From: Guillardia theta CCMP2712 | Lineage: Eukaryota > Protista > Cryptophyta | Length of the DNA: 64,000 nt | Assembly: GCF_000315625.1 (NCBI RefSeq) | Contig: NW_005434660.1 | Location: forward strand, 804,738 to 868,737 | Reading direction: 5' to 3' | Shown here: one piece after another, positions 7,901-53,900 of the stretch | Layout: each line of letters begins with the position of its first letter | Position numbering within the stretch: the stretch's first letter is position 1 | Position numbers and translations under genes: made by a program | The notes under the pieces: model-generated | What the model was told of the DNA's origin: nothing | The model's database searches: none | The model's input: only the letters and a program-made list of their open reading frames with translations

Positions 7901-9562
7901 CATCAGCATGATTGCGTCGACGATGACGCAGACGGCGACGATCAAGTTGATGATCGTGATCATGAAGGGTAACAAAGTTTGTTGTTTGCTTCCCGTTGGT
8001 TGTGATTGTTGTGCTGCTGCTAGTCTGCAGCTGTCTGGTGATGAGGATGAGGATGGAGGACATGACGAGGGTGATGTTGGAAGGCCCAGGAGACTGCTGG
8101 TCGACTTACCAACCCCGAGATGTATTTCGGCTTGTCCGACTTCTGCGAATGAGAAACTGTTTAGAAGGGCAAACAAGATCATCGATAGGAAACAAGGACC
8201 TTGTCCTTGTCCTTGTCCTTGTCCTTGTCCTTCTTCTTTCCTAGGCCAGTCAACGCTCCGATGGAGGCAGCGACAAGCTTCAGGCCGGACTGCAGGTGAT
8301 AGTGAGCAGAGGCAAGAGGAGAGGAGGTGAGCAGGGCTCCAGGGATAGTACAAGGGGAGGAAGCATAGAAGGGGAGGGTTGACGTCAACCTTCTTCTTCT
8401 TGAGCTCCTTGTCATGACGAGGCTCTCCGTCCTTGTCCGGCGAAACTTCTCCTTCCACAAGGTTCTTCTCGATGAGGCGCGGAGCCCCCGACAGGGCCTG
8501 TAACCAGCATGCTCGTCATGCGCGTTCAACAAGAAATCGTCCCGACTCGACCTGAGCAGCGATGGGATCGGAGAGCGGCTCTGAGGTGAACGAGATAACT
8601 TTTCCAGAGTAGCTGGCAAGCACCACCTCGTCGAAGCTGGTCGTGCAGACACGCCCGACTTCGACATCCTGGATGCTCTCGTTGATACACTTGGAGAATA
8701 TCTGGTGCATATCGCCCTGAGAATCCAGGGTGAACACTTGGAGCTCCCCGTCATCACGCCCGACGATGATATCCTCCATCCCATTCTTGGTCAGGTCGTG
8801 CGAGGCAATCACGTTGATCGCCCCCAAACTGCGCACGTTCTGAATCGTCCATCCAGGTCGCACGACGGTAGCGTCGGCCTGTAGCTCTCCCACCAGGCCG
8901 TTCTCAGTGCCGTAGACAATGTTCTTTGCCTTGGTTTGCTTCATGACGTCCTCATAGGTGGTACTCTGCAGTTTTGACAGGCAGGAGACCGGGCCATCGA
9001 CGAAACTCTCAAAGAGAACCGAGGTCTTGTCAAGGATCCTGACCTGCCGATCCTGACAGCCAAGGACGGGGTTGTACTCCGACGGAGACTGTATGTGCAG
9101 GAGCAAGCCATCGTTGATTTTGTCCGGTGACATGTAGTATCCGGACTCGACATTGTCGACGTAATAGTTGAACAGGTATTCTCCGCTTGTCCAAAGTTTC
9201 GTGTCCTCTACATGCAAACCCCGCAGCGACTCTGCTCCGTCCGTGCTGAACTTGAAGAACTCCTTGCCCTTCTTGTTTACTCCCCTCACAGTCTGTCCTG
9301 ACGTGAAGAAGATCTTATCGCTCTTATCCTTGGACCCTCCGATGATCAGGCGGAGCACGGGATAGTCCAGGTTCCCCGTCTGGAACTCAATCTCCGGCTC
9401 GCCCTTCTTCACTTTGAAACATGTCACTATCCCGTTGTCAGCTCCCACCACCACCCTATGACACTTCTTCTTGTCCGAGGGCGGCATCAGCCCCAGACTT
9501 CTTCCTGTGATGCATGTCGACTGGTAGAGGTCTTTCCTGGTCAACTGAATGTCCAGCTCCAT
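4443..9562 (-). CDS. BBS7: Bardet-Biedl syndrome 7 protein (BBSome subunit), multi-exon
   Basis: The first exon MELDIQLTRKDLYQ..VVVGADNGIVTCFKVKKGE..DKIF..VRGVNKKGKEFF..YYMSPDKIND matches the BBS7 beta-propeller. Internal exons include FTLESEMPIDMVAL, IQLMCDEGQVG and LLKLLHPK. The C-terminus TDLLQLFLDRFKFKGVNVKHRL..Y|SWESFVELFAAAR* has its stop at 4443-4445. Confidence 0.95.
4777..4967. repeat. Compound (GACT)n-(GGCT)n-(GACT)n microsatellite within a BBS7 intron
   Basis: Directly visible. Confidence 0.95.
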
Positions 9563-12500
9563 CTCAAAAGATGAACTGAGGCAGGGTAGACACAGGTCAC
9601 GATCAGCAAAGCCTCAACACGGCGACAGCGACGTCATGGTCGATACATCACCACGTCATCAGAGCTCCTACGAACACACAAGATGTCAACATCGCTCATC
9701 GCACATGCAAGCTCGCTCTTGTAGTCATAATAAGGTGCCCCGAAGACCAAGCTCTACAACTATTCTCCCCTCAATTTCACCCAAATCAGCCAGTCGCTGC
9801 TCGTTATCGTAGTAGCTAATCATGCTTTCTGCATGCATCACTCGTGTAGAGCTCGGCCCACCAACTTTATCTGTTGCCACAAGCTTGAAATGGCTGGCTG
9901 GACCAGACATTGTTCAACTTGCATGTTTCAAGTCCTGCTCGCATACTCTGATGTTGCATACCTTACCGACAACATCTTCGAATCTATTCAACTACTTCAT
10001 CGTCCTCTCTCGTTCTTGCAAACAGACTCAATCTTCTTACGACTGTCCCTTTTCCATCCTTCTGCTCCTCTACCTCCTCGTCTTATGCCTCCCATCCTCT
10101 CCATGACCGGCATTCCTTCCCCTTCCCTTCCCTTCCTCAAAATGGCGCGATCCGCATTTTGTCCCCACCCCCACGACTGACAGTGATAACCCATATTTGA
10201 AGTACCCCTACCACCGAACGATATTCAGAAAGTACCCCTACCCCCAGCATTTCCACTCATCTCGTACGAGCCTGCCTCGCCTCATTTAACTCAACTTTGA
10301 GCAAACAACCACCACCTTTGCTTTTTGACGGCGTGGGAAACTTGAAAACCGGGCTCTGATCAGCGGCCATGATCGTGTGCGGCCGCGTGCGCCAGTACTT
10401 GGTTCGTTGGAAAGGATATGACAGTGACAAGTCGTCGGATGATTCATGGTTGTCTACACGTGAATTTCGCACTTCAGAGTTGAGGAAAATGCCACCGGAC
10501 AAGTTCGTGATTTCAATCTTGTGAATCATGCTCGGTGACTCTTGGGGCGGCCGTACTACCCGTATGCAGCGAAGTTGGAGCTGAGAACTTTCGGAACTAC
10601 GAAGTGTCACACGGTTCTCATCTAGCAGCGCTAGGGAGCGAAATGATAGGAGTGTCCTAGGCAGTATCGATTCTTAGCCTAATTAGATTAGTTACTGCCA
10701 GTTTCTTTATTTCTTACTGTTACGCCGAGTTCGAGTAAAGTACCCGGTACCCGTTGGAATTGTGCTGTGTTGACGCACTCGGCGGCCGGCGTGAAGTCGG
10801 ATCCATCCGATGATCCGATCATGAAAGTAGGGATAACTCGAGTATGACACAGGGACTCTCATCGGATGCGGCTAGCCTGGGCTCGGCTCAGAGCAGATAG
10901 ATGACCGCTGCGACGGTTCTCTAAACGCCGCCGAGTACTATCATCGGATGATTCAACGGTTGGGTCACTGTGACTGACGCCACGCTGACAGGCTGGCACG
11001 GGTGACGGGTGACGGTGCCACACCGTGAGTCACCCGAACCGTCGTGGGCCCAGCCGGGCCGGCGCTCGAGCAAAAGAGATCGTCCCCTTGCGAATCGCAG
11101 GCTCCAAGGCTCGCTCATAGCGTTGTCCGATCGCTCTCAACTGACCCCTCTGGTTTCCAATAGTTTTCTGTGGGGGTATCCTTCCACACATGTGAATAGC
11201 AAATGGCAGTTGGGGTCTGGGGTGGGTCAGACGGCTGGGAGCTGATTCAAATTGGTAGAGACCTGTTTAAGGGGGTAGGGTACTTCCTGGTAGCAAATAA
11301 TTGTACCAACAGTACCAATTTTATGGTACATATTCGAGTACTGTTAGGAAAACTTGTACCAAAATAGTTTATGCGGTACCTCCCCTGTTCAAACTATGAT
11401 GCTTTGGACCCACCTGTTTCCCAGTGAAAGTCCCTTCTCCGATGGGGTCAAGTTTTGGACCCTACCCTGCCTCCGACCAACATAGACCACCCTTGTAGAT
11501 CAGAGGGAGCTCTCAAGCCTTGCCCCTTCCCTTCCCTGGTTGCATATCCAAGGTTAGCAAGTGAATGTTACGCAGACGTGACTCATCTGCAGCAGGAGAG
11601 CTCAGACGAGGACAAGAAGAGGCAATCCCTGCAGAATCTGGTGTGAGCGCAGCAGTCTGAAAACATCTCTGTGATTGCAAACACATGTAAAGAGGGTTGA
11701 TCATCATAGATTTTAGCAGCTTGAATAAGGAGTACTCCGCACGGACCGTCCGCTAGTGGCGCTGTACGATGGATGACATTGACTCTCATGAGCAATAAGT
11801 AGGAAGTCATGAAGCATGTCACGGAGACAGCATGATCTATACTTATTTCATAGGAATCTGCTGCAAAGAGTCGGGCTTGAGGGCGGTCTGAGCAATATGC
11901 AAGAGTATTGCCAAGGCATGTAAAGAGTTTCAAGGAATACCAGTGCATTCATCAAATGGCAGTGATGAGGTACCACATGAAGGCATGACTTGCAAATTGA
12001 TTGCATGTCGTGTTCTATTTCATGACTTACAATCAAGACGCTTTGAGCGACAAAACGATACCCCTTATAGCATTGTAAATCATAGTTCATTTCCTTCACC
12101 TCGAGTCGAAGCAAGAAATTTTCAAGGTGCTGATATCTTTGTTGTGACTAGACTGACATGGTATCAGGAGCAGTTAATTGATGTTGGATGCGATTGAATC
12201 ATGCAGACGAAAATGGACATACCCTTTTGAATAAATTTTTCTTCTCGAGTCTCATACCAGAGCTTTCTTGCCTCTTTCTTTGTAACCTAACATGTACAAA
12301 GCATTGGCATTTTCTTACACAAAGTAAACTGAGCCTGACCAGCTTCTCTTATTCGCTGCATTCTCGCCCTTCCATCATCCTGATCTTTTCCTCGCTTGAC
12401 ACCCTTGGGCCAATGCGAGTTGCATGCTGCGATATCATCAATTGTTTGGAAGGAACCAAGCGATAAGTGGAACAAAGCGCTCAGGTGCTATGCAGGCTGC

Positions 12501-14166
12501 AATGCATCGCCGGCATTCCAACCATATGGATAAGTTTGCCAACTTTGCGCTGCTCATATTACTTGCAGCAAAAGTCAACCATTCCAGATGATAAGGACAA
12601 TGTATGAGACTTGCGCAGAAGAATGTGCAAACACTTCCACACGACGGTGAGTGTGCACGATTCCACATACACAAGAGAAGCATCTACCAATTTCTTGTCT
12701 AAACACTCTTTTGATGAATGAGCATCGACTTCTCTAACATGTACATCAGGTCATGCAGGCTCATGGAGAAATGATGATGTTGTTAGCAACAACTTGGCTT
12801 TGTTTTATTGAAGTACGTTGAAAACATCACCTAGGCCGCTACATATTCCCATGTCCGCTTTGCAACAGTTCTAAACCACGTATCACCATAAAGTTGTACA
12901 TCATTCGACTAGTCCGATAACATCTTCATGTAGAGTCTCAGGTTTAAGCACAACGCGGTTTGGAGCGATACTGTGACTTGTTTGCCTGGTATGATTACAT
13001 GTGACATGCTCTCTTACACAATTGAAGAGTATTGTAGAAAATTCAGTCAAGCGGTGCACAGTTCAGCCTTGCTTTCTTGCTATTCATCAAACATAGTGTA
13101 TCAAACAGATGTCATCGTGTGGATCGACGCAAAATAAAGATGAACTCGAAGTTCTGTCTGAAAAATGACCCTTTGCAAGTACTGATGGATCGAGAGCAAG
13201 TTCTTGATGCTGTATCATTGAGAAGTAAAATGACAGTCATAAGCCAGTGCTATACGACTCGTATCCATCAGCTTGAAATATGAACCACTGAGTTTCATTC
13301 CATGAATCATCTTTCCTCCCGCATTCAAACTGAGAAACTCAGTGCTTGTCAACTCATGGGCATGGTTTCAGAGTTTGAATTTCCAGCAAGTTGAGGAAGG
13401 ACAAGGCAGACAGAAGCGTCAAAGAAAGTTGAGGGTCATCAGGGAAGGTCTGACGAGAGTCTGAGACTCATGGACAGGGAAGGATAGGGATGCGCAAGTG
13501 CGGAGGGCAGGGAGATGGGGAGGGAGACCCCCTCTGCTAAATGTATTTTAAAAGGTACCCATTACAGTACCAGACCAAGACCTGTACCCCCCACCCCCCT
13601 GTCGCGTCCGTTGGGTTCGAATATTTGAAATACTACCACGCCTACCCATCAGGTTCTGGTACAAATCATTACTCCACTATACAAGGGCCTAAGTGATCCT
13701 ATGCAAAGGCAATAGGAACAACTGTTTACTTATCTAAGCTCTCAATTACCCCCGGTTGCCGTTGAACGTGCAGCGCTGGAAATGGATTTTCAAACCTTCC
13801 AATCCTTCGATTTTTTACTCACACACAATTTTGTACTGGAAAATGCCTGGATCTGGTACAAATCCCAATTGTCAGCAAGTTCCTTGACCCGACAACGCTA
13901 TGGGCAGTGCTACCTGCCGGGCAGACTCAGAGTGTTTGTGATAACTTGATCGCTGCCGGTTGCCAGGAAAGTTGCCACAGTGTACTACGGTACCCGACCG
14001 GAAAACTTTCACGATTGTCAGAACAATCCGACGCGTCCTGAGGCGGGCCCGTATACAGCGGTATAAGTTTTTCAATTATTTTTGTTAACTTATATCTCGT
14101 CAAATTTTGCCTAGCTAAGAAACCTAGGGAGGCCACCACCCCACCCCCACCTTCTCACCAAATCCA

Positions 14167-14305: not shown

Positions 14306-17300
14306 ATGCAGAGCAGTGATCCTCCCTCCTCCCCACAAGATCAACACAGTGACTTGTCCCTCCAAAAAACATTGATCATCACCAAGGAAGAGCTCCAAAG
14401 AAAGCACGATCGAATTTGTGAATCGGACGACGACGATGACAGACCTGTACGCCCGAAGAAAAAGCAGAAAGCATCAAGCTCGGAGTCAGATGACTATGAA
14501 GAACAAACAACAAGCAATGCTGCCAATGCCTCCAATCCTGTGTGTTCGATTGATACCTCAACTGCAAGCGGTCCTTTAGCAAACTCGAACGTTACTCAAG
14601 TTGCTGAAAGAGGGCCTGTCCATCCACTCGACCAAGCACGGAACGCGGGGGAAATCAACAAGATCTTGAAGGATATGAACATGCCCGGGAACAAGGGCAA
14701 GATCGGGAAGGGGGGTATCAACTCCATCATCCGAGCGATGCAAAGGAACGATGTACAGTTGACTTCAGATACCAGGCTGCGTGCCTTGACGCTGCTGGCA
14801 AACTTGACCGCCAACAACATGAAATACAGGGATGCAGCAGCAGGAGGCATCTCTGCGATCCTGGCAGCAATGCAGACCTGCTCTCAAAACGGGGAAGTGC
14901 AGAGGGAAGGGTGCAAGGCGATTGCGAACCTTGCTCTCAGTGATAACCTCTGGACATTGATGGGGTGGCAGACAGGGTGCATCAAGACTATTGTGAAAGC
15001 CATCAAGGCTTATTCACAGAGAATGGAGGTCTTCACGCAGGCATGCAGGGCTCTGGCGAACTTGGCTGACTCCAACGAGCATGGTAGAATCGAGGTCAGG
15101 GAGGAAGGGGGCATCGACGCAATCATCAAAACAATGGAGGAGCAGCTGGAGGGCGAGAACAACGGGGAAGTACCTGAGCACGCATGCAGGGCGCTGAGGT
15201 GCTTGGCTTTCAACAACGCCGATAACCAGGTCAAGATCAGGGAGGAAGGGGGCATCAAGGCGATCGTGGGGGTGTTGAAGAAGCACTCCAATTATAAACA
15301 GGTATGTGAACAGGCGTGCGGAGCGCTGGGGCATTTGGCTGCAAACAATGACAACGCGGTCAAGATCAGGGAGGAAGGGGGCATCAAGGCGATTGTGGAG
15401 GCGATGCATGAGAACCCAGGCCATGAGGAGGTATATCAGGAGGCATGCAGGGCACTGGGGTACTTGGCTGCAAACAACGATGACAACAGGAACAAGATCA
15501 GGGAGGAAGGGGGCATCAAGGCGATCGTGGGGGCGATGGAGCGGCACAAAAGAAGAAAGGAAGTACAGGAGCAGGCGTGCTGGGCGCTGGGGTGCTTGGG
15601 TACACAAAACGATGACAACAGGAACAAGATCAGGGAGGAAGGGGGCATCAGGGCGATCGTGGGGGCGATGGAGCGGCACAAGGGGAGCAAGGAAGTACAG
15701 GAGCAGGCGTGCTTGGTGCTGGGGTGCTTGGGTACACAAAACGATGACAACAGGAACAAGATCAGGGAGGAAGGGGGCATCAGGGCGATCGTGGGGGCGA
15801 TGAAGCGACACAAGAGGAGCAAGGAAGTACAGGAGCAGGCGTGCAGGGCTCTGGGGTGCTTGGGTACACACAACACGGCAAACAAGGTCAAGATCAGGGA
15901 GGAAGGGGGCATCGAGGCGATCGTGGGGGCGATGGAGGGGCACAAGGGGAGCAAGGAAGTACAGGAGCAGGCGTGCTTGGCGATGGGAAATTTGGCTGCA
16001 AACAGTACAGAAAACGAAGTCAAGATCAGGGAGGAAGGAGGCATCAAGGCGATCGTGGGGGCGATGGAAGGGCACAAGGGCAGCAAGGAAGTACAGCAGC
16101 AGGCGTGCTGGGCGATGGGGCACCTGGCAACCAACAACGATGACAACAGGAACAAGATCAGGAAGGAAGGGGGGATCAAGGCGATCGTGGGGGCGATGGA
16201 GGGGCACAAGGGGAGCAAGGAAGTACAGCAGCAGGCGTGCAGGGCGCTTGCAATCTTGGCTGCAAACAACACGGCAAACAAGGTCAAGATCAGGGAGGAA
16301 GGAGGCATCAGGGCGATCGTGGGGGCGATGGAGGGGCACAAGGGGAGCAAGGAAGTACAGCAGTGGGCGTGCTGGGCACTTAGTAACTTGGCTGCAAGAA
16401 ACGATGACAACAGGAACGAGATCAGGGAGGAAGGGGGCATCAAGGCGATTGTGGAGGCGATTGTGGAGGCGACATGGGAAGCAATGGCAGCAAGGAAGTA
16501 CAGCAGCAGGCGTGCTGGGCGATGGGGCACCTGGCAACCAACAACGATGACAACAGGAACAAGATCAGGGAGGAAGGGGGCATCAAGGCGATCGTGGGGG
16601 CGATGGAGGGGCACAAGGGGAGCAAGGAAGTACAGGAGCAGGCGTGCAGGGCGCTTGCAATCTTGGCTGCAAACAACACGGCAAACAAGGTCAAGATCGG
16701 TGGAGGAAGGGGGCATCAAGGCGATCGTGGGGGCGATGGAGGGGCACAAAGGCAGCAAGGAAGTACAGCAGCACGCTTGCAGGGCGCTGGGAAACTTGGC
16801 TGCACACAACGCCGATAACCAGGTCAAGATCAGGGAGGAAGGGGGCATCAGGGCGATCGTGGGGGCGATGGAGGGGCACAAGGGGAGCAAGGAAGTACAG
16901 GAGCAGGCGTGCTTGGCTCTGGGGTACTTGGTTGCACACAACGCCGATAACGCCTTCAAGATCAGGGAGGAAGGGGGCATCGAGGCTATCGTGGGGGCGA
17001 TGAAGCGACACAAGGGGAGCAAGGAAGTACAGCAATGGGCGTGCTGGGCGCTGGGGCATTTGGCAACCAACAACGAAGACAACAGGAACAAGATCAGGGA
17101 GGAAGGAGGCATCAGGGCGATCGTGGGGGCGATGGAGGGGCACAAGGGGAGCAAGGAAGTACAGGAGCAGGCGTGCTGGGCGCTGAAGCACTCGGCTGCA
17201 CACAACGCCGATAACACGATCAACATCAGGGAGGAAGGGGGCATCAGGGCGATCGTGGGGGCGATGGAGGGGCACAAAGGCAGCAAGGAAGTACAGGAGC

Positions 17301-18437
17301 AGGCGTGCTTGGTGCTGGGGCACCTGGCAACCAACAACGATGACAACAGGGTCAAGATCAGGAGGAAGGAGGCATCAGGCGATCGTGGGGGCGATGGAGG
17401 GGCACAAGGGGAGCAAGGAAGTACAGGAGCAGGCGTGCTGGGCGCTGGGGCACCTGGCAACCAGCAATGCCGATAACCAGGTCAAGATCAGGGAGGAAGG
17501 ACGCATCAGGGCGATCGTGGGGGCGATGGAGGGGCACAAGGGGAGCAAGGAAGTACAGGAGCAGGCGTGCTGGGCGATGGGGCACCTGGCAACCAGCATT
17601 GCCGATAACCAGGTCAAGATCAGGGAGGAAGGGGGGATCAAGGCGATCGTGGGGGCGATGGAGGGGCACAAAGGCAGCAAGGAAGTACAGCAGCAGGCGT
17701 GCTGGGCGCTGGGAATCTTGCCTGGAAACAATGCGGAGAACGAGGTCAAGATCAGGGAGGAAGGGGGGATCAACGCGATCGTGGGGGCGATGGAGGGGCA
17801 CAAGGGGAGCAAAGGAAGTACAGCAATGGGCGTGCTTGGCGCTTAGTATCTTGGCTGCACACAAAGATGACAACAGGAACAAGATCAGGGAGGAAGGGGG
17901 CATCAAGGCGATTGTGGGGGCGATGGAGGGGCACAAGGGGAGCAAGGAAGTACAGGAGCAGGCGTGCTTGGCGCTTAGTACCTTGGCTGCACACAACGAT
18001 GACAACAGGAACAAGATCAGGGAGGAAGGAGGCATCAGGGCGATCGTGGAAGCGATGAAGCGACACAAGGGGAGCAAGGAAGTACAGCAATGGGCGTGCT
18101 TGGCGCTTGCAATCTTGGCTGCAAACAACGAAGACAACAGGAACAAGATCAGGGAGGAAGGGGGCATCGAGGCGATCGTGGGGGCGATGGAGGGGTACTC
18201 GTGGGCTCCAGGTGTTCTGGAGAAGGCTTTTGAATCTTTGTTGACACTGGCTTCCACTTCAAGGAACAGGGTAGTTGTTGTTGTTGTTGGTTATTCATTC
18301 ACACTTTTCTGCAGGACTACATGCGACAGAAGCGCGTGAGATCCTGTGTATCTTTTTTCATGGATGAGTTTCTGCAGAATGCTACCATCCAGGATAAAGG
18401 GAAGAGATTACTTGCCTTGTTGTTACTAGATTTTTGA
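14306..18437 (+). CDS. Large armadillo (ARM) tandem-repeat protein with a putative NLS; frameshifted in this assembly
   Basis: Acidic N-terminus with RPVRPKKKQK, then ~5 diverged ARM repeats, ~20 near-identical 44-aa units (KIREEGGIKAIVGAMEGHKGSKEVQEQACWALGHLATNNDDNRN) and a capping repeat. One intron at 18271-18314 precedes a last exon DYMRQKRV..KRLLALLLLDF*. Indels occur at ~16475, ~16699, ~17360, ~17378 and ~17811. Confidence 0.9.
15495..18195 (+). repeat. 132-bp coding tandem repeat array (~20 units)
   Basis: aagatcagggaggaagg recurs with a 132-bp period (15495, 15627, 15759, 15891...). Confidence 0.95.
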
Positions 18438-38792: not shown

Positions 38793-38892
38793 NNNNNNNN
38801 NNNNNNNNNNNNNNNNNNNNNNNNNNNNNNNNNNNNNNNNNNNNNNNNNNNNNNNNNNNNNNNNNNNNNNNNNNNNNNNNNNNNNNNNNNNN
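38793..38892. other. Assembly gap (others at 44096-44979, 45974-46094, 52460-52833)
   Basis: Runs of N. Confidence 1.
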
Positions 38893-43725: not shown

Positions 43726-44979
43726 CGCCCATCAGTCTCAAGAAGGTACCCCACCCCCACCATGACACACCCTCTCTGACTCTCATCGCTCGATTTTAAG
43801 ACCCCTTTATATTTAGATAAATGGTGGGGTACTATAAGTTAATTTGAGGGTAGGGTACATGACACCCACCCCTTGCAGAGAGTACCCCACCCAGTCTAAT
43901 ATACTCGTCCTCTGTATTTCTTGATCATGCTGGGGGAAGAATGTGAGAGCGCGGGGGACTTCGGCGGGAGGAGGAGGAGGAGGAGGAGGAGGAGGAGGAG
44001 GAGGAGGAGGAGGAGGAGAAGGAATTCATGGTACACGATAGCGAAGGGGGATCACAGGCTTTGAGGAAGTGCAGTGGGAGGAGAGGAGTAGGGAGNNNNN
44101 NNNNNNNNNNNNNNNNNNNNNNNNNNNNNNNNNNNNNNNNNNNNNNNNNNNNNNNNNNNNNNNNNNNNNNNNNNNNNNNNNNNNNNNNNNNNNNNNNNNN
44201 NNNNNNNNNNNNNNNNNNNNNNNNNNNNNNNNNNNNNNNNNNNNNNNNNNNNNNNNNNNNNNNNNNNNNNNNNNNNNNNNNNNNNNNNNNNNNNNNNNNN
44301 NNNNNNNNNNNNNNNNNNNNNNNNNNNNNNNNNNNNNNNNNNNNNNNNNNNNNNNNNNNNNNNNNNNNNNNNNNNNNNNNNNNNNNNNNNNNNNNNNNNN
44401 NNNNNNNNNNNNNNNNNNNNNNNNNNNNNNNNNNNNNNNNNNNNNNNNNNNNNNNNNNNNNNNNNNNNNNNNNNNNNNNNNNNNNNNNNNNNNNNNNNNN
44501 NNNNNNNNNNNNNNNNNNNNNNNNNNNNNNNNNNNNNNNNNNNNNNNNNNNNNNNNNNNNNNNNNNNNNNNNNNNNNNNNNNNNNNNNNNNNNNNNNNNN
44601 NNNNNNNNNNNNNNNNNNNNNNNNNNNNNNNNNNNNNNNNNNNNNNNNNNNNNNNNNNNNNNNNNNNNNNNNNNNNNNNNNNNNNNNNNNNNNNNNNNNN
44701 NNNNNNNNNNNNNNNNNNNNNNNNNNNNNNNNNNNNNNNNNNNNNNNNNNNNNNNNNNNNNNNNNNNNNNNNNNNNNNNNNNNNNNNNNNNNNNNNNNNN
44801 NNNNNNNNNNNNNNNNNNNNNNNNNNNNNNNNNNNNNNNNNNNNNNNNNNNNNNNNNNNNNNNNNNNNNNNNNNNNNNNNNNNNNNNNNNNNNNNNNNNN
44901 NNNNNNNNNNNNNNNNNNNNNNNNNNNNNNNNNNNNNNNNNNNNNNNNNNNNNNNNNNNNNNNNNNNNNNNNNNNNNNN

Positions 44980-45545: not shown

Positions 45546-46094
45546 TAGGAGCAGGAGTCTCTGTCTGGACTGAGACAGTGCGTGACAGGCTCTGGACTTG
45601 ACCACTGAGGAGATCGAGGAACTGCAAGGAAGGTGAGGGTTGAAGAGAGCATGCTTCTGAATCATATCTATCTACCTAGCTAGCTATCATCACCACCATC
45701 ATGTAACATTTTGCTGTTTAGCCCGGCGCTCGATTATCTCGTGCAGCAGAAGAATGACTTGCGGCAACTTTATGAGGATCTTTTCCCCAAACTGTCTCAA
45801 GCGTTTCCAGAGGTCTGACCATCCCTTCCCCTCCTCCCCCTCCTCCCCCTCCTCCCCTTCCCCCTTGCCATCCCCTACCTGCTTCTCCTGCTTCTCCTGC
45901 TGCTGCTGCTGCGGTGGTGGCGGTGGCTGCCGCGGCCACGGCCGCGCTGCTGCTGCTGCTGCTGCTGCTGCTGNNNNNNNNNNNNNNNNNNNNNNNNNNN
46001 NNNNNNNNNNNNNNNNNNNNNNNNNNNNNNNNNNNNNNNNNNNNNNNNNNNNNNNNNNNNNNNNNNNNNNNNNNNNNNNNNNNNNNNNNNNNNN

Positions 46095-51963: not shown

Positions 51964-53900
51964 GAACCATGGCTGCCTCAAGACGGAGCAGAAGGAGAAT
52001 GCGGGGATCCTTGAGCGGACCTCCAAATGGCCTGCGCTGTGTGGGGCAGATGCGGTCAAGAGTCTTCCAAAGGTGAGATGAGGAGGAGGGAGGGGAGAGT
52101 AAGGGCACAGGGGGGAAGAGGAGGAGAAAGCAAAGAAGGAAGGTGTTGATCCAAGTGTTGATGAAATTGGGAAACGGGAGAAAGAGCAACAGGAACAGAT
52201 TGAGGTAGTGGGCACAACGAGGGTCAAATTGTCAGAGGAGGTGGAGGAGGAGGAGGAGGAGGAGGAGGAGGAGGAGGAGAAGTGGATTGAAAGTCTGGTG
52301 TGCGCGGCGATGATCGTTTGTCCAGGTCCAGCCAGTGAAGGGAGCAGGGACGAGCGAGAGCATCCTCTGGAGAGACGCGGAACGAACGTGAGAAGAGGAG
52401 GAGCATGAGAATGAGAGGAGGAGCAGAGGTGCAGGTGGAGGTGGAGGAGGTGGAGGAGGNNNNNNNNNNNNNNNNNNNNNNNNNNNNNNNNNNNNNNNNN
52501 NNNNNNNNNNNNNNNNNNNNNNNNNNNNNNNNNNNNNNNNNNNNNNNNNNNNNNNNNNNNNNNNNNNNNNNNNNNNNNNNNNNNNNNNNNNNNNNNNNNN
52601 NNNNNNNNNNNNNNNNNNNNNNNNNNNNNNNNNNNNNNNNNNNNNNNNNNNNNNNNNNNNNNNNNNNNNNNNNNNNNNNNNNNNNNNNNNNNNNNNNNNN
52701 NNNNNNNNNNNNNNNNNNNNNNNNNNNNNNNNNNNNNNNNNNNNNNNNNNNNNNNNNNNNNNNNNNNNNNNNNNNNNNNNNNNNNNNNNNNNNNNNNNNN
52801 NNNNNNNNNNNNNNNNNNNNNNNNNNNNNNNNNCCTCCCGCCTCTCCTTTCCTCCGCCCTCCTCCTCCTCCTGCCCTTGCTCCCCTCCCCTTCCTCCTCC
52901 TCCTCCTCCTCTCCCTCTGCACATCTCCCTTATTGCTCCTCCTCCTGCTCCACCCTCGGCTCCTCACCCTCCTGTCCCAGGCGTTCCTGCAGGAGGGGTA
53001 CATGTTCCTCTTCAAACTCTCCGTGTCCATCGTGGAGGCAATCAAGGCACAGATACTGGCAACGAAACAGAGCGAGGTCGGTGCTAGTCTCGTACGATGC
53101 GTCCTCTGACGTGACGTACAGGTCAACAAACTTTTCGAGCTCATGAGGCTCGACGAGAAGGTCTTTCCCGATGACAACATGGACTTCTTCAAGTCCATCC
53201 TGCAAGCTGCCAAGGTCCCATCATCCCCCTCCTCCCTATCCCACTTCTCAGCCTCTCGTCCTCTCATTTTCTCCCTCTTCTCTGCCTCTTTCCCCTGCCC
53301 CCTGTCCCTGTCCCTCACCCTTCCCCTCGCACTCCCCATCTCTCTTCCTCCTCTTCCCCCTCCCCACATATCTCCCTCTTCTTCCTCCTCCTCCACCGCC
53401 ACCACCGCTCACTCTTCCTTCCTACTTCCCTGCTCTAGATGTTCTTCTCTCTTCACCTCTTGACCTGTCACCCTCCCTGATTTTCTTCTCCAGGATTGCG
53501 ATCTCAAGTCCTCCGACATCGATGCCATGCGCGCAACACAGATGAAGATCCTCCAGGAGAAGCTGGAGAAGGTGAAAGACCTCCAACCTTCCTCCCCTCC
53601 TGCCTCTCCTCCCTCCCTCCTTCCACCTTTGCTCCCGCGCACACTTCCCTTCCTCGCTCCTTCCTGCCCCTCCCTCCCAACTTTCCCATCCCTCCCCTGC
53701 CACTTCTGAGCTGTCATCGAAGGTGCGAGAGAGAGAGAAAGAGCTCAAGGACGACAGCGACGATGAGATCGTGTTCTCAGACGAGGACGAGGACGAGGAG
53801 GTACCTTCACGTTCTCCTCCTCCCTTCTCCCTCTCCCCCGTGCTGAGCTAGCGCTCCACAGGACGAATCCGAGAGGCTCGCGCGGCTGGCAGCGCAGTGA
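51964..53900 (+). CDS. Probable TBC/Rab-GAP domain protein (core probably in or near the N gap); start uncertain
   Basis: AFLQEGYMFLFKLSVSIV resembles the TBC C-terminal F..EG...LF helix. An upstream exon R..KWPALCGA resembles the TBC R..xW..L.G motif. The acidic tail ends ARLAAQ* at 53900. Confidence 0.55.

What the first reader, a model, noticed from the sequence alone, without database searches (positions are those of the whole stretch)
14306..18437. Possible combinatorial armadillo binder: ~20 homogenised 132-bp repeats varying mainly at the ligand-binding positions
Seen: the scaffold (KIREEGGI.AIVGAM..HKGSKEVQ) is nearly invariant even at silent sites. Helix 3 varies from unit to unit: [Q/W/H]AC[W/L/R]A[L/M][G/A/S/K][H/C/N/Y/I/T]L[A/G/V][T/A][N/Q/H/R/S]. 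The following segment comes in a few cassettes (NDDNRN, NADNQV, NTANKV, STENEV, NADNAF) that are paired with different helix-3 variants, and one two-unit block (WAMGHLATNNDDNRN + RALAILAANNTANKV) recurs three units later. Established: aligned to importin-alpha (EQAVWALGNIAGD), these variable sites are the groove-facing residues, including the WxxxN pair that binds peptide. Inference: the array is under concerted evolution with diversifying selection and unit shuffling, conceptually like TALE repeat-variable residues, VLRs or fungal NLR repeats. A PKKKQK motif suggests a nuclear location. It could be an undescribed algal recognition or defence system for extended peptides or nucleic acid.
Basis: partly seen in the sequence, partly recalled or inferred. 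Interest (0 to 1): 0.88.

Follow-up and report, generated by a model that had tools for sequence, protein, structure and literature searches.

The report
Hypervariable armadillo-repeat array in Guillardia
This is a real gene-sized array of about 24 near-identical armadillo repeats whose differences sit on the predicted ligand-binding face, and it belongs to a large, undescribed cryptophyte family whose other members join such arrays to protease, ADP-ribosyltransferase or ubiquitin-ligase/kinase domains; this copy has no such enzyme domain and may be broken.

Summary
Window 14306-18437 is one gene. It has an ATG, a linker, 3 degenerate and 24 regular 132-bp ARM units, a 44-nt intron, a C-cap exon and a stop. 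Twenty core units are 94% identical in helices 1-2 but only 73% in helix 3 plus loop. Amino-acid variation peaks at six helix-3 codons. These align with the pocket positions of designed and importin-type ARM proteins (30, 33, 36, 37, 40, 41).

In this array groove dN/dS is only about 1.1-1.6 and not significant. Silent divergence is also three times higher in helix 3.

The same six positions are hypervariable in at least nine other arrays of the genome (Guillardia theta CCMP2712). One array shows dN far above dS. Those paralogs carry CHAT/caspase-fold, ART-like or U-box+kinase heads. That pattern resembles fungal NLR repeats with high internal conservation, but without a NOD domain.

This copy has no head domain. 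A 2.8-kb transposon ends 400 bp upstream of its ATG. The assembly shows four frame breaks, and reads contradict at least one. Transcription is weak. A defence role remains inference.

The scan noted a CHAT-ARM fusion elsewhere in this genome (s1-432857).

The parts
14306..18437 (+). Whole gene: ATG to TGA. Exon 1 is 14306-18270, the intron is 18271-18314 and exon 2 is 18315-18437.
   Evidence: ORF and three-frame translation. GT..AG intron and last exon read from the sequence. The C-terminal cap is homologous to the ends of the C118 paralogs.
14306..14701 (+). N-terminal acidic/Ser-rich linker with the basic motif PKKKQK (14453-14470) and a helix LDQARNAGEINKILKDMNMPGNKGK. It is homologous to the linker that follows the CHAT-like head in paralogs. 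No Pfam domain.
   Evidence: tblastn of the C118 head plus linker hits only 14462-14824, E 1e-5. BLASTP to P0013. Pfam finds no family. A basic K-rich motif is conserved after the head in six of eight aligned paralogs; the alignments of the other two stop before it.
14702..15493 (+). About three degenerate N-terminal ARM units followed by the diverged units u1-u3.
   Evidence: Unit-HMM hits from 14843. Identity to core units is 63-84%.
15494..18144 (+). Homogenised core: 20 units (u4-u23) of 44 codons. The scaffold is codons 1-25. Helix 3 is codons 22-38, with hypervariable codons 27, 30, 33, 34, 37, 38. The loop and helix 1 are codons 39-44.
16446..16474 (+). Frame break 1 in u11: a 12-bp duplication (16446-57 / 16458-69) plus a CA insertion at 16473-74. 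The net change for the unit is +11 nt.
   Evidence: This read-depth bin is low (13 against a flank depth near 20) and X1 contig depth is 2.4. No run was listed for its two sampled words.
16699..16701 (+). Frame break 2 in u13: +1 (T at 16701) with A>G at 16699. It restores the frame of the ATG.
   Evidence: This is the lowest-depth bin of the array.
17360..17379 (+). Frame break 3 in u18: two G-run contractions (GGG to GG) at 17361-62 and 17378-79.
   Evidence: Six of 14 DNA reads and the X1 contig carry an extra G behind 17360.
17811..17813 (+). Frame break 4 in u21: AA becomes AAA (+1).
   Evidence: Low-depth bin.
18145..18437 (+). Last unit and C-cap, split by a 44-nt intron (18271-18314). 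Stop codon TGA is at 18435-18437.
11116..13903 (.). A 2.8-kb dispersed repeat (transposon-like) that ends about 400 bp upstream of the ATG. It is not part of the gene but probably explains the missing 5' part.
   Evidence: At least 19 near-full copies at 95-99% identity. Read depth is about 300 against about 20.

Best explanation
The locus is one member of a large cryptophyte family of armadillo-array proteins, with at least 50 places in the Guillardia theta genome.

How the arrays evolve: unequal exchange and short-tract conversion between tandem 43-44-codon units keep helices 1-2 nearly identical. Six side chains on one face of helix 3 (plus one in helix 1) are kept different from unit to unit. 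Those positions line the ligand groove of ARM solenoids. Each array therefore presents a long row of non-identical pockets, that is, a modular binding surface for an extended ligand, most likely a peptide.

In the paralogs this sensor or recruitment array is wired to an enzymatic head: a CHAT/caspase-fold protease, an ART-like domain, or U-box plus kinase.

The window copy keeps the family's linker, its array and its C-cap with the short intron. It has no head, a transposon sits just upstream, and it is at best weakly transcribed. It is either an ARM-only derivative or a recently decaying copy. The four frame breaks are at least partly assembly errors.

Shown: the fold, the position-specific hypervariability, its replication across arrays, the head domains of the paralogs and the absence of a head here.

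Inferred: selection for diversity, peptide ligands, and any role in defence or self/non-self recognition.
For: - Array and fold.
- Variation on helix-3 groove positions: with PMC4756613 and PMC11228518 for the pocket residues 29, 30 and 33.
- A priori replication of the six positions in ten other arrays: groove w is 0.7-2.3 and about 32 in the C2 array (dS 0.01, dN 0.33). Other helix-3 codons give 0.1-0.5.
- Event counts: groove nonsynonymous rate is 1.1-3.1 times the array-wide synonymous rate, with p<0.03 in 3 of 7 arrays. Non-groove positions give 0.4-0.95.
- Other surface loops (codons 16-23) stay nearly invariant, which argues against simple relaxed constraint.
- Edges of the array are more diverged than the core. 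Mosaicism gives Rm>=8.
- Heads of the paralogs: U-box 4.5e-18 and kinase 4.4e-55; ART 1.4e-4; CHAT 0.0034. The head model matches the SAVED-CHAT filament 8tl0 at E 2.8e-10, then Csx29 and caspase-3.
- There are 22 head loci in the genome, and the same head with ARM domains occurs in Hanusia phi.
- Linker and C-cap homology of the window gene.
- Transposon.
- Reads: an extra G behind 17360, fixed differences at 17502 and 17865, and the four break bins being the four lowest-depth bins of the array.
- X4 contigs cover 14393-15258 but neither the transposon nor the flanks, so X4 behaves like RNA.
Against: - In this array groove dN/dS is not significantly above 1.
- Silent divergence is also about 3 times higher in helix 3 than in the scaffold. 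Uneven homogenisation or old cassettes could produce much of the pattern.
- The four C118 arrays are not independent replicates.
- The Asn37-equivalent that binds the peptide backbone in importin-type ARMs is not conserved.
- The CHAT and ART Pfam hits are below the gathering score. The head model has pLDDT of only 66, and the putative catalytic Cys is R or S in two paralogs.
- No ligand, no expression response and no strain polymorphism has been seen.
- RNA raw reads from a 2026 run are almost absent: 4 reads.
- The assembly of the array is unreliable in detail.
Confidence: 0.62

Rival explanations
1. Neutral by-product. A recently amplified tandem array is being homogenised unevenly. Helix-3 surface positions simply tolerate change, and older cassettes survive where conversion tracts end. 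There is no selection for diversity and no combinatorial function.
For: Groove dN/dS is near 1 in this array and in several others. dS is raised in the same segment. The PHI-like test shows no distance dependence.
Against: The same six codons are hypervariable in arrays with different scaffolds. The C2 array has groove dN 0.33 at dS 0.01. Other exposed loop residues are not variable. Combining the per-array p-values for four independent arrays by Fisher's method gives about 7e-4; this combination was worked out by hand, not in a tool call.
Confidence: 0.2
2. Dead relic. The window copy is a 5'-truncated, frameshifted pseudogene of a CHAT-ARM gene. Whatever the family does, this locus does nothing.
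For: No head domain in 64 kb. A transposon ends 400 bp upstream. There are four frame breaks, one of them a non-homopolymer CA insertion. A large RNA run gave about 0 reads.
Against: There is no stop codon in the ARM register of any of the 24 units. The splice sites and the C-cap exon are intact. Scaffold dN/dS is 0.27. Reads contradict the assembly at 17360, 17502 and 17865, and coverage is poor at all four break bins. X4 transcript-like contigs cover 14393-15258.
Confidence: 0.35
3. Ordinary structural or adaptor ARM protein, for example a flagellar central-apparatus or trafficking scaffold, whose repeat similarity only reflects recent expansion.
For: Foldseek also matches an ARM chain of the sperm central apparatus (9ijj, TM 0.87). 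ARM proteins are mostly scaffolds.
Against: At least 50 paralogous places, tandem clusters, and heads of protease, ART and U-box-kinase type. The position-specific hypervariability. No orthologue-like conservation outside cryptophytes.
Confidence: 0.08

Closest known systems
Fungal NLR repeat domains with high internal conservation (Podospora HNWD/het-e WD40; ANK, TPR and HEAT arrays; Dyrka et al. 2014, PMC4986451)
   Same: Tandem repeats are kept nearly identical by concerted evolution. The hypervariable and positively selected codons map to the binding face. The families are expanded, with varied effector heads.
   Different: The repeat type here is ARM. No NACHT or NB-ARC domain was found in the ORFs examined. 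The window array is 76% identical at the protein level, below the 85% criterion (the C2 array meets it). Strain polymorphism and function are untested.
Brown-algal candidate receptors (Ectocarpus NB-ARC-TPR and LRR-ROCO; Zambounis et al. 2012, PMC3341825)
   Same: An algal lineage-specific expansion of repeat arrays with shuffled, fast-evolving units, proposed to act as recognition receptors.
   Different: There each repeat is a separate exon, shuffled by exon shuffling. Here the whole array is one exon and diversifies by exchange between units. The repeat type and the heads also differ.
Importin-alpha and designed armadillo repeat proteins (dArmRP, e.g. 5mfl, 5aei; PMC4756613, PMC11228518)
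   Same: The same fold (TM 0.77-0.87). The same register, with the variable codons aligning to the pocket positions 30, 33, 36, 37, 40 and 41 that define or are engineered for side-chain specificity.
   Different: The W33/N37 ladder is not conserved, there is no IBB domain, the units are 44 aa with a longer H2-H3 loop, and there are 24-27 units instead of about 10.
CHAT proteases coupled to repeat sensors (TPR-CHAT/Csx29 Craspase, SAVED-CHAT 8tl0)
   Same: The paralog heads have the CHAT/caspase fold with an H...C dyad motif and are fused to a long repeat array.
   Different: They are eukaryotic, ARM replaces TPR or SAVED, and no nucleotide or CRISPR trigger is apparent. The window gene itself lacks the head.
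Plant U-box ARM (PUB-ARM) E3 ligases
   Same: Some paralogs (C192, C207, C38) join a U-box to an ARM array.
   Different: Those paralogs also carry a TKL kinase and have homogenised, hypervariable units. The window gene has no U-box.

Membership tests
Armadillo repeat superfamily (Pfam PF00514) | Repeats of about 42 aa that match the Arm profile above the gathering score | tested here: met
   E 2.5e-67, 221 bits against a cut-off of 20.6, with 8 stretches in residues 1-715. The three later frame pieces also match.
Armadillo repeat superfamily (Pfam PF00514) | Three-helix units stacked into a right-handed superhelix | tested here: met
   AF2 on 7 units gives pLDDT 94 and pTM 0.91 with three helices per 44 residues. 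Foldseek matches 5mfh, 4rv1 and 5mfd at TM 0.77-0.87.
Importin-alpha-type NLS receptor | Conserved Trp/Asn (WxxxN) ladder on helix 3 of consecutive repeats | tested here: not met
   Codon 30 is W in 9 of 20 units and codon 34 is N in 3 of 20.
Importin-alpha-type NLS receptor | N-terminal importin-beta-binding (IBB) domain | tested here: not met
   No Pfam family matches residues 1-179. A test of cis-binding of the basic motif gave no verdict.
High-internal-conservation repeat receptors (fungal NLR type) | Repeats more than 85% identical over at least 100 aa | tested here: not met
   Core units are 76% identical at the protein level and 84% at the nucleotide level; the scaffold half is 94%. The paralogous C2 array would meet the criterion.
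High-internal-conservation repeat receptors (fungal NLR type) | Positive diversifying selection at binding-face codons | tested here: inconclusive
   Window w is 1.08-1.65, p 0.06-0.3. Evidence is significant in the C2 array and in two C118 arrays.
High-internal-conservation repeat receptors (fungal NLR type) | Central NOD (NACHT or NB-ARC) domain | tested here: not met
   No such Pfam hit in the window protein or in the paralog heads examined.
High-internal-conservation repeat receptors (fungal NLR type) | Repeat-number and sequence polymorphism between isolates | not testable with these tools
Guillardia CHAT-ARM family (e.g. GUITHDRAFT_113481) | N-terminal CHAT/caspase-fold head | tested here: not met
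   tblastn of the head against the whole 64-kb window finds nothing upstream of the linker.
Guillardia CHAT-ARM family (e.g. GUITHDRAFT_113481) | Family linker (basic motif, Ser-rich stretch, LxQAxxxxEIxxILK helix) and a C-cap exon after a short intron | tested here: met

The most novel reading that the evidence does not exclude
Cryptophytes have a NOD-less intracellular recognition repertoire. Dozens of genes would use a concertedly evolving ARM array with hypervariable pocket residues as a sensor coupled to a death or signalling head (CHAT protease, ADP-ribosyltransferase, U-box-kinase). Headless arrays such as this one would act as ARM-only adaptors or decoys, or as sequence reservoirs for unit exchange.
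Probability: 0.2. Interest if true: 0.85.

Novelty: new variant of a known kind. Interest (0 to 1): 0.62.

Why it matters
Repeat arrays that are kept uniform except on their binding face are the hallmark of fast-evolving recognition receptors, such as fungal NLRs, lamprey VLRs and brown-algal TPR/LRR genes. They have not been described for armadillo repeats or for cryptophytes; two literature searches found nothing.

If the family is a recognition system, it would give a handle on innate immunity or self/non-self recognition in an ecologically important algal group. It would also be a natural counterpart of the engineered modular armadillo peptide binders, with ready-made pocket variants.

For this particular locus the value is mainly as the entry point to the family. 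The copy itself lacks an effector domain and may not be intact.

Tried and rejected
- Complex prediction of the N-terminal linker (residues 26-85, with PKKKQK) against ARM residues 101-715, to test cis-binding like an importin IBB: no verdict, score 0.00. This is not evidence either way.
- A second look-up of sequencing runs on the u11 break (16432-16500): only two sampled words and none listed. Too weak to decide.
- The PHI-like permutation test for recombination was not significant (p 0.28), because incompatibility is saturated at all distances.
- Search for a CHAT head or any other domain upstream: none. The region is a transposon, then an unrelated gene on the other strand.
- No annotated protein for this locus was returned, so the public gene model could not be compared.
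- The structure model file is not exposed to scripts. Groove mapping therefore rests on the sequence alignment to dArmRP and on helix periodicity, not on computed solvent exposure.
- HyPhy and codeml site models were not available. I used Nei-Gojobori and minimum-spanning-tree event counts instead.
- Rejected: a TALE-like nucleic-acid code (nothing bears on it), and a misassembly artefact as the explanation of the whole pattern (it recurs at many loci).
Full report
**1. What is there**

The window is C14:804738-868737 of an 87.1-Mb, 669-contig genome. A hit to GUITHDRAFT_113481, on a contig whose length equals that of C67, identifies the genome as Guillardia theta CCMP2712.

TRF reports a 132-bp period with 22.9 copies at 15166-18195. 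Anchoring on the KIREEGG motif gives 24 units from 15092 to 18276. A unit HMM adds about three degenerate units from about 14700.

The ORF opens at 14306. The last unit runs into a GT..AG intron of 44 nt (18271-18314). A final exon (18315-18437, TGA) encodes a cap that is homologous to the C-termini of the paralogs.

Pfam Arm scores E 2.5e-67. AF2 on seven units gives pLDDT 94 and pTM 0.91 with three helices per 44 residues. The best structural matches are designed ARM proteins with bound peptides, at TM 0.77-0.87.

**2. Where the variation lies**

The core units u4-u23 are 93.6% identical over nt 1-75 and 72.7% identical over nt 76-132. Amino-acid entropy peaks at codons 27, 30, 33, 34, 37 and 38 of helix 3, at codons 40, 43 and 44 of the loop and helix 1, and at codon 9.

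A phmmer alignment to the dArmRP chain 5mfl sets codon k equal to dArmRP position k+3. The six helix-3 codons therefore correspond to E30, W33, S36, N37, S40 and G41. PMC4756613 describes Glu30 and Trp33 as surface residues of the peptide site. PMC11228518 describes pockets built from helix-3 residues 29, 30 and 33 of adjacent repeats.

The block u8-u9 recurs as u11-u12. Loop cassettes pair with different helix-3 cores. In all, 182 of 351 informative site pairs fail the four-gamete test, giving Rm>=8 within one unit. The edge units u1-u3 and u24 are far more diverged than the core, which is the usual signature of unequal exchange.

**3. Is it diversifying selection?**

In this array the Nei-Gojobori values are as follows:

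| Codon class | dS | dN | dN/dS |
|---|---|---|---|
| Scaffold (1-25) | 0.16 | 0.04 | 0.27 |
| Six groove codons | | | 1.08 |
| Other helix-3 codons | | | 0.26 |
| Loop | | | 0.41 |

Silent divergence is about three times higher in helix 3 plus loop (0.53) than in the scaffold.

Event counts give 22 nonsynonymous against 3 synonymous changes at the groove codons (w 1.65, p 0.30). Measured against the array-wide synonymous rate the ratio is 1.63 (p 0.064).

**4. The family**

A seven-unit query finds 139 matches on more than 40 contigs. Arrays on C118 (four tandem genes), C2, C10, C192, C207 and C38 each have their own nearly invariant scaffold, and each varies at the same helix-3 positions.

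I used the six codons defined on the window as an a priori set. Results in the other arrays:
- Groove w is 2.25, 1.09, 1.18 and 2.09 in the four C118 arrays.
- It is about 32 in the C2 array (dS 0.010, dN 0.325).
- It is 0.70 in C10 and 0.84-1.34 in C192, C207 and C38.
- Other helix-3 codons give 0.10-0.50 everywhere.
- The groove nonsynonymous rate exceeds the array-wide synonymous rate 1.1-3.1-fold, with p<0.03 in three of seven arrays.

Exposed loop residues 16-23 do not vary, so plain relaxed constraint is a poor fit. I read this as good family-level evidence for selection, or targeted diversification, on the groove. For the window array the evidence is only suggestive.

**5. What the arrays are attached to**

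- The C118, C10, C67 and C207 genes start with a 250-aa head containing HLACHG...LNLCWSG. Pfam CHAT gives E 0.0034, below the cut-off. An AF2 model (pLDDT 66, core 76-92) matches the SAVED-CHAT filament 8tl0 at E 2.8e-10, then Csx29 and caspase-3. The Cys is R or S in two paralogs.
- There are 22 such head loci in the genome. A Hanusia phi protein has the same head with ARM domains.
- The C2 gene has an ART-like head (E 1.4e-4, just under the cut-off) followed by hydrophobic segments.
- The C192, C207 and C38 genes have a U-box (4.5e-18) and a kinase (4.4e-55).
- More distant ARM arrays from other protists are fused to TIR_2, Peptidase_C14 or PARP domains. Pycnococcus and Pseudoscourfieldia arrays show the same style of repeat.

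**6. State of the window copy**

The N-terminus is homologous to the linker that follows the CHAT head, but no head exists anywhere in the 64 kb.

A 2.8-kb dispersed repeat occupies 11116-13903. It has at least 19 copies at 95-99% identity and read depth of about 300 against about 20.

The assembly breaks the frame at four places: 16473-74, 16701, 17361 with 17378, and 17811-13.

DNA reads disagree with the assembly:
- An extra G behind 17360 appears in 6 of 14 reads and in the X1 contig.
- 17502 is C>G in 5 of 5 reads, which turns R back to the consensus G.
- 17865 is A>C in 7 of 7 reads.
- The four bins that contain the breaks are the four lowest-depth bins of the array, while several other bins reach 1.5-2 times the flank depth.

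Unit order, unit number and the breaks are therefore not reliable. The CA insertion in u11 is not a homopolymer slip and may be real. No unit has a stop codon in its ARM register.

A large RNA run gave 4 reads. The X4 contigs cover 14393-15258 and parts of the array, but neither the transposon nor the flanks. X4 therefore behaves like RNA and indicates low-level expression.

**7. Verdict**

A recognition or defence role is inference from architecture and from analogy to fungal NLR repeats (PMC4986451) and brown-algal receptors (PMC3341825). No paper on such ARM arrays in Guillardia was found.

Noticed in passing
window 11116-13903: A 2.8-kb AT-richer dispersed repeat with at least 19 near-full copies (95-99% identity) across the genome. 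It has no long ORF and shows about 15-fold excess read depth. It looks like a recently active non-autonomous transposon.
   Followed up: partly
L034:4965-9999 and L047:1-398 (G000:C2:438965-444398, minus strand): A gene with an ART-like (NAD:arginine ADP-ribosyltransferase) head, hydrophobic segments and 34 almost identical 43-aa ARM units. The same frameshifted units recur two or three times (HC*SSLAMTTTWSR; WALTEARRQ*). This is either a higher-order duplication of a broken unit or reuse of reads by the assembler.
   Followed up: partly
L039:2694-6014 (C192), L037:5491-8427 (C207), L041:1700-5578 (C38): U-box plus TKL-type kinase plus homogenised ARM arrays. This architecture recalls plant PUB-ARM ligases but adds a kinase.
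   Followed up: partly
L031/L043/L032/L044/L033 (G000:C118:124-168 kb, minus strand): A tandem cluster of at least four CHAT-ARM genes that share one scaffold (KIAGLGGIEAVLAAMRAHPASQ) but have different helix-3 residues.
   Followed up: yes
alignment A1, columns about 245-255: A basic K-rich motif (PQRKKVKT, PKTKKLKA, PTVKKMKI, PLKKKIKS; PKKKQK in the window gene) is conserved just after the CHAT-like head in six of eight aligned paralogs; the alignments of the other two stop before it. It could be an NLS, a cleavage site or a cis-ligand for the groove.
   Followed up: partly
window 8516-9562 (minus strand): A 348-aa ORF of an unrelated upstream gene on the opposite strand. It was not examined.
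   Followed up: no
window 38793-38892, 44096-44979, 45974-46094, 52460-52833: Four runs of N (assembly gaps), 1479 bases in total. The scaffold is a draft.
   Followed up: no
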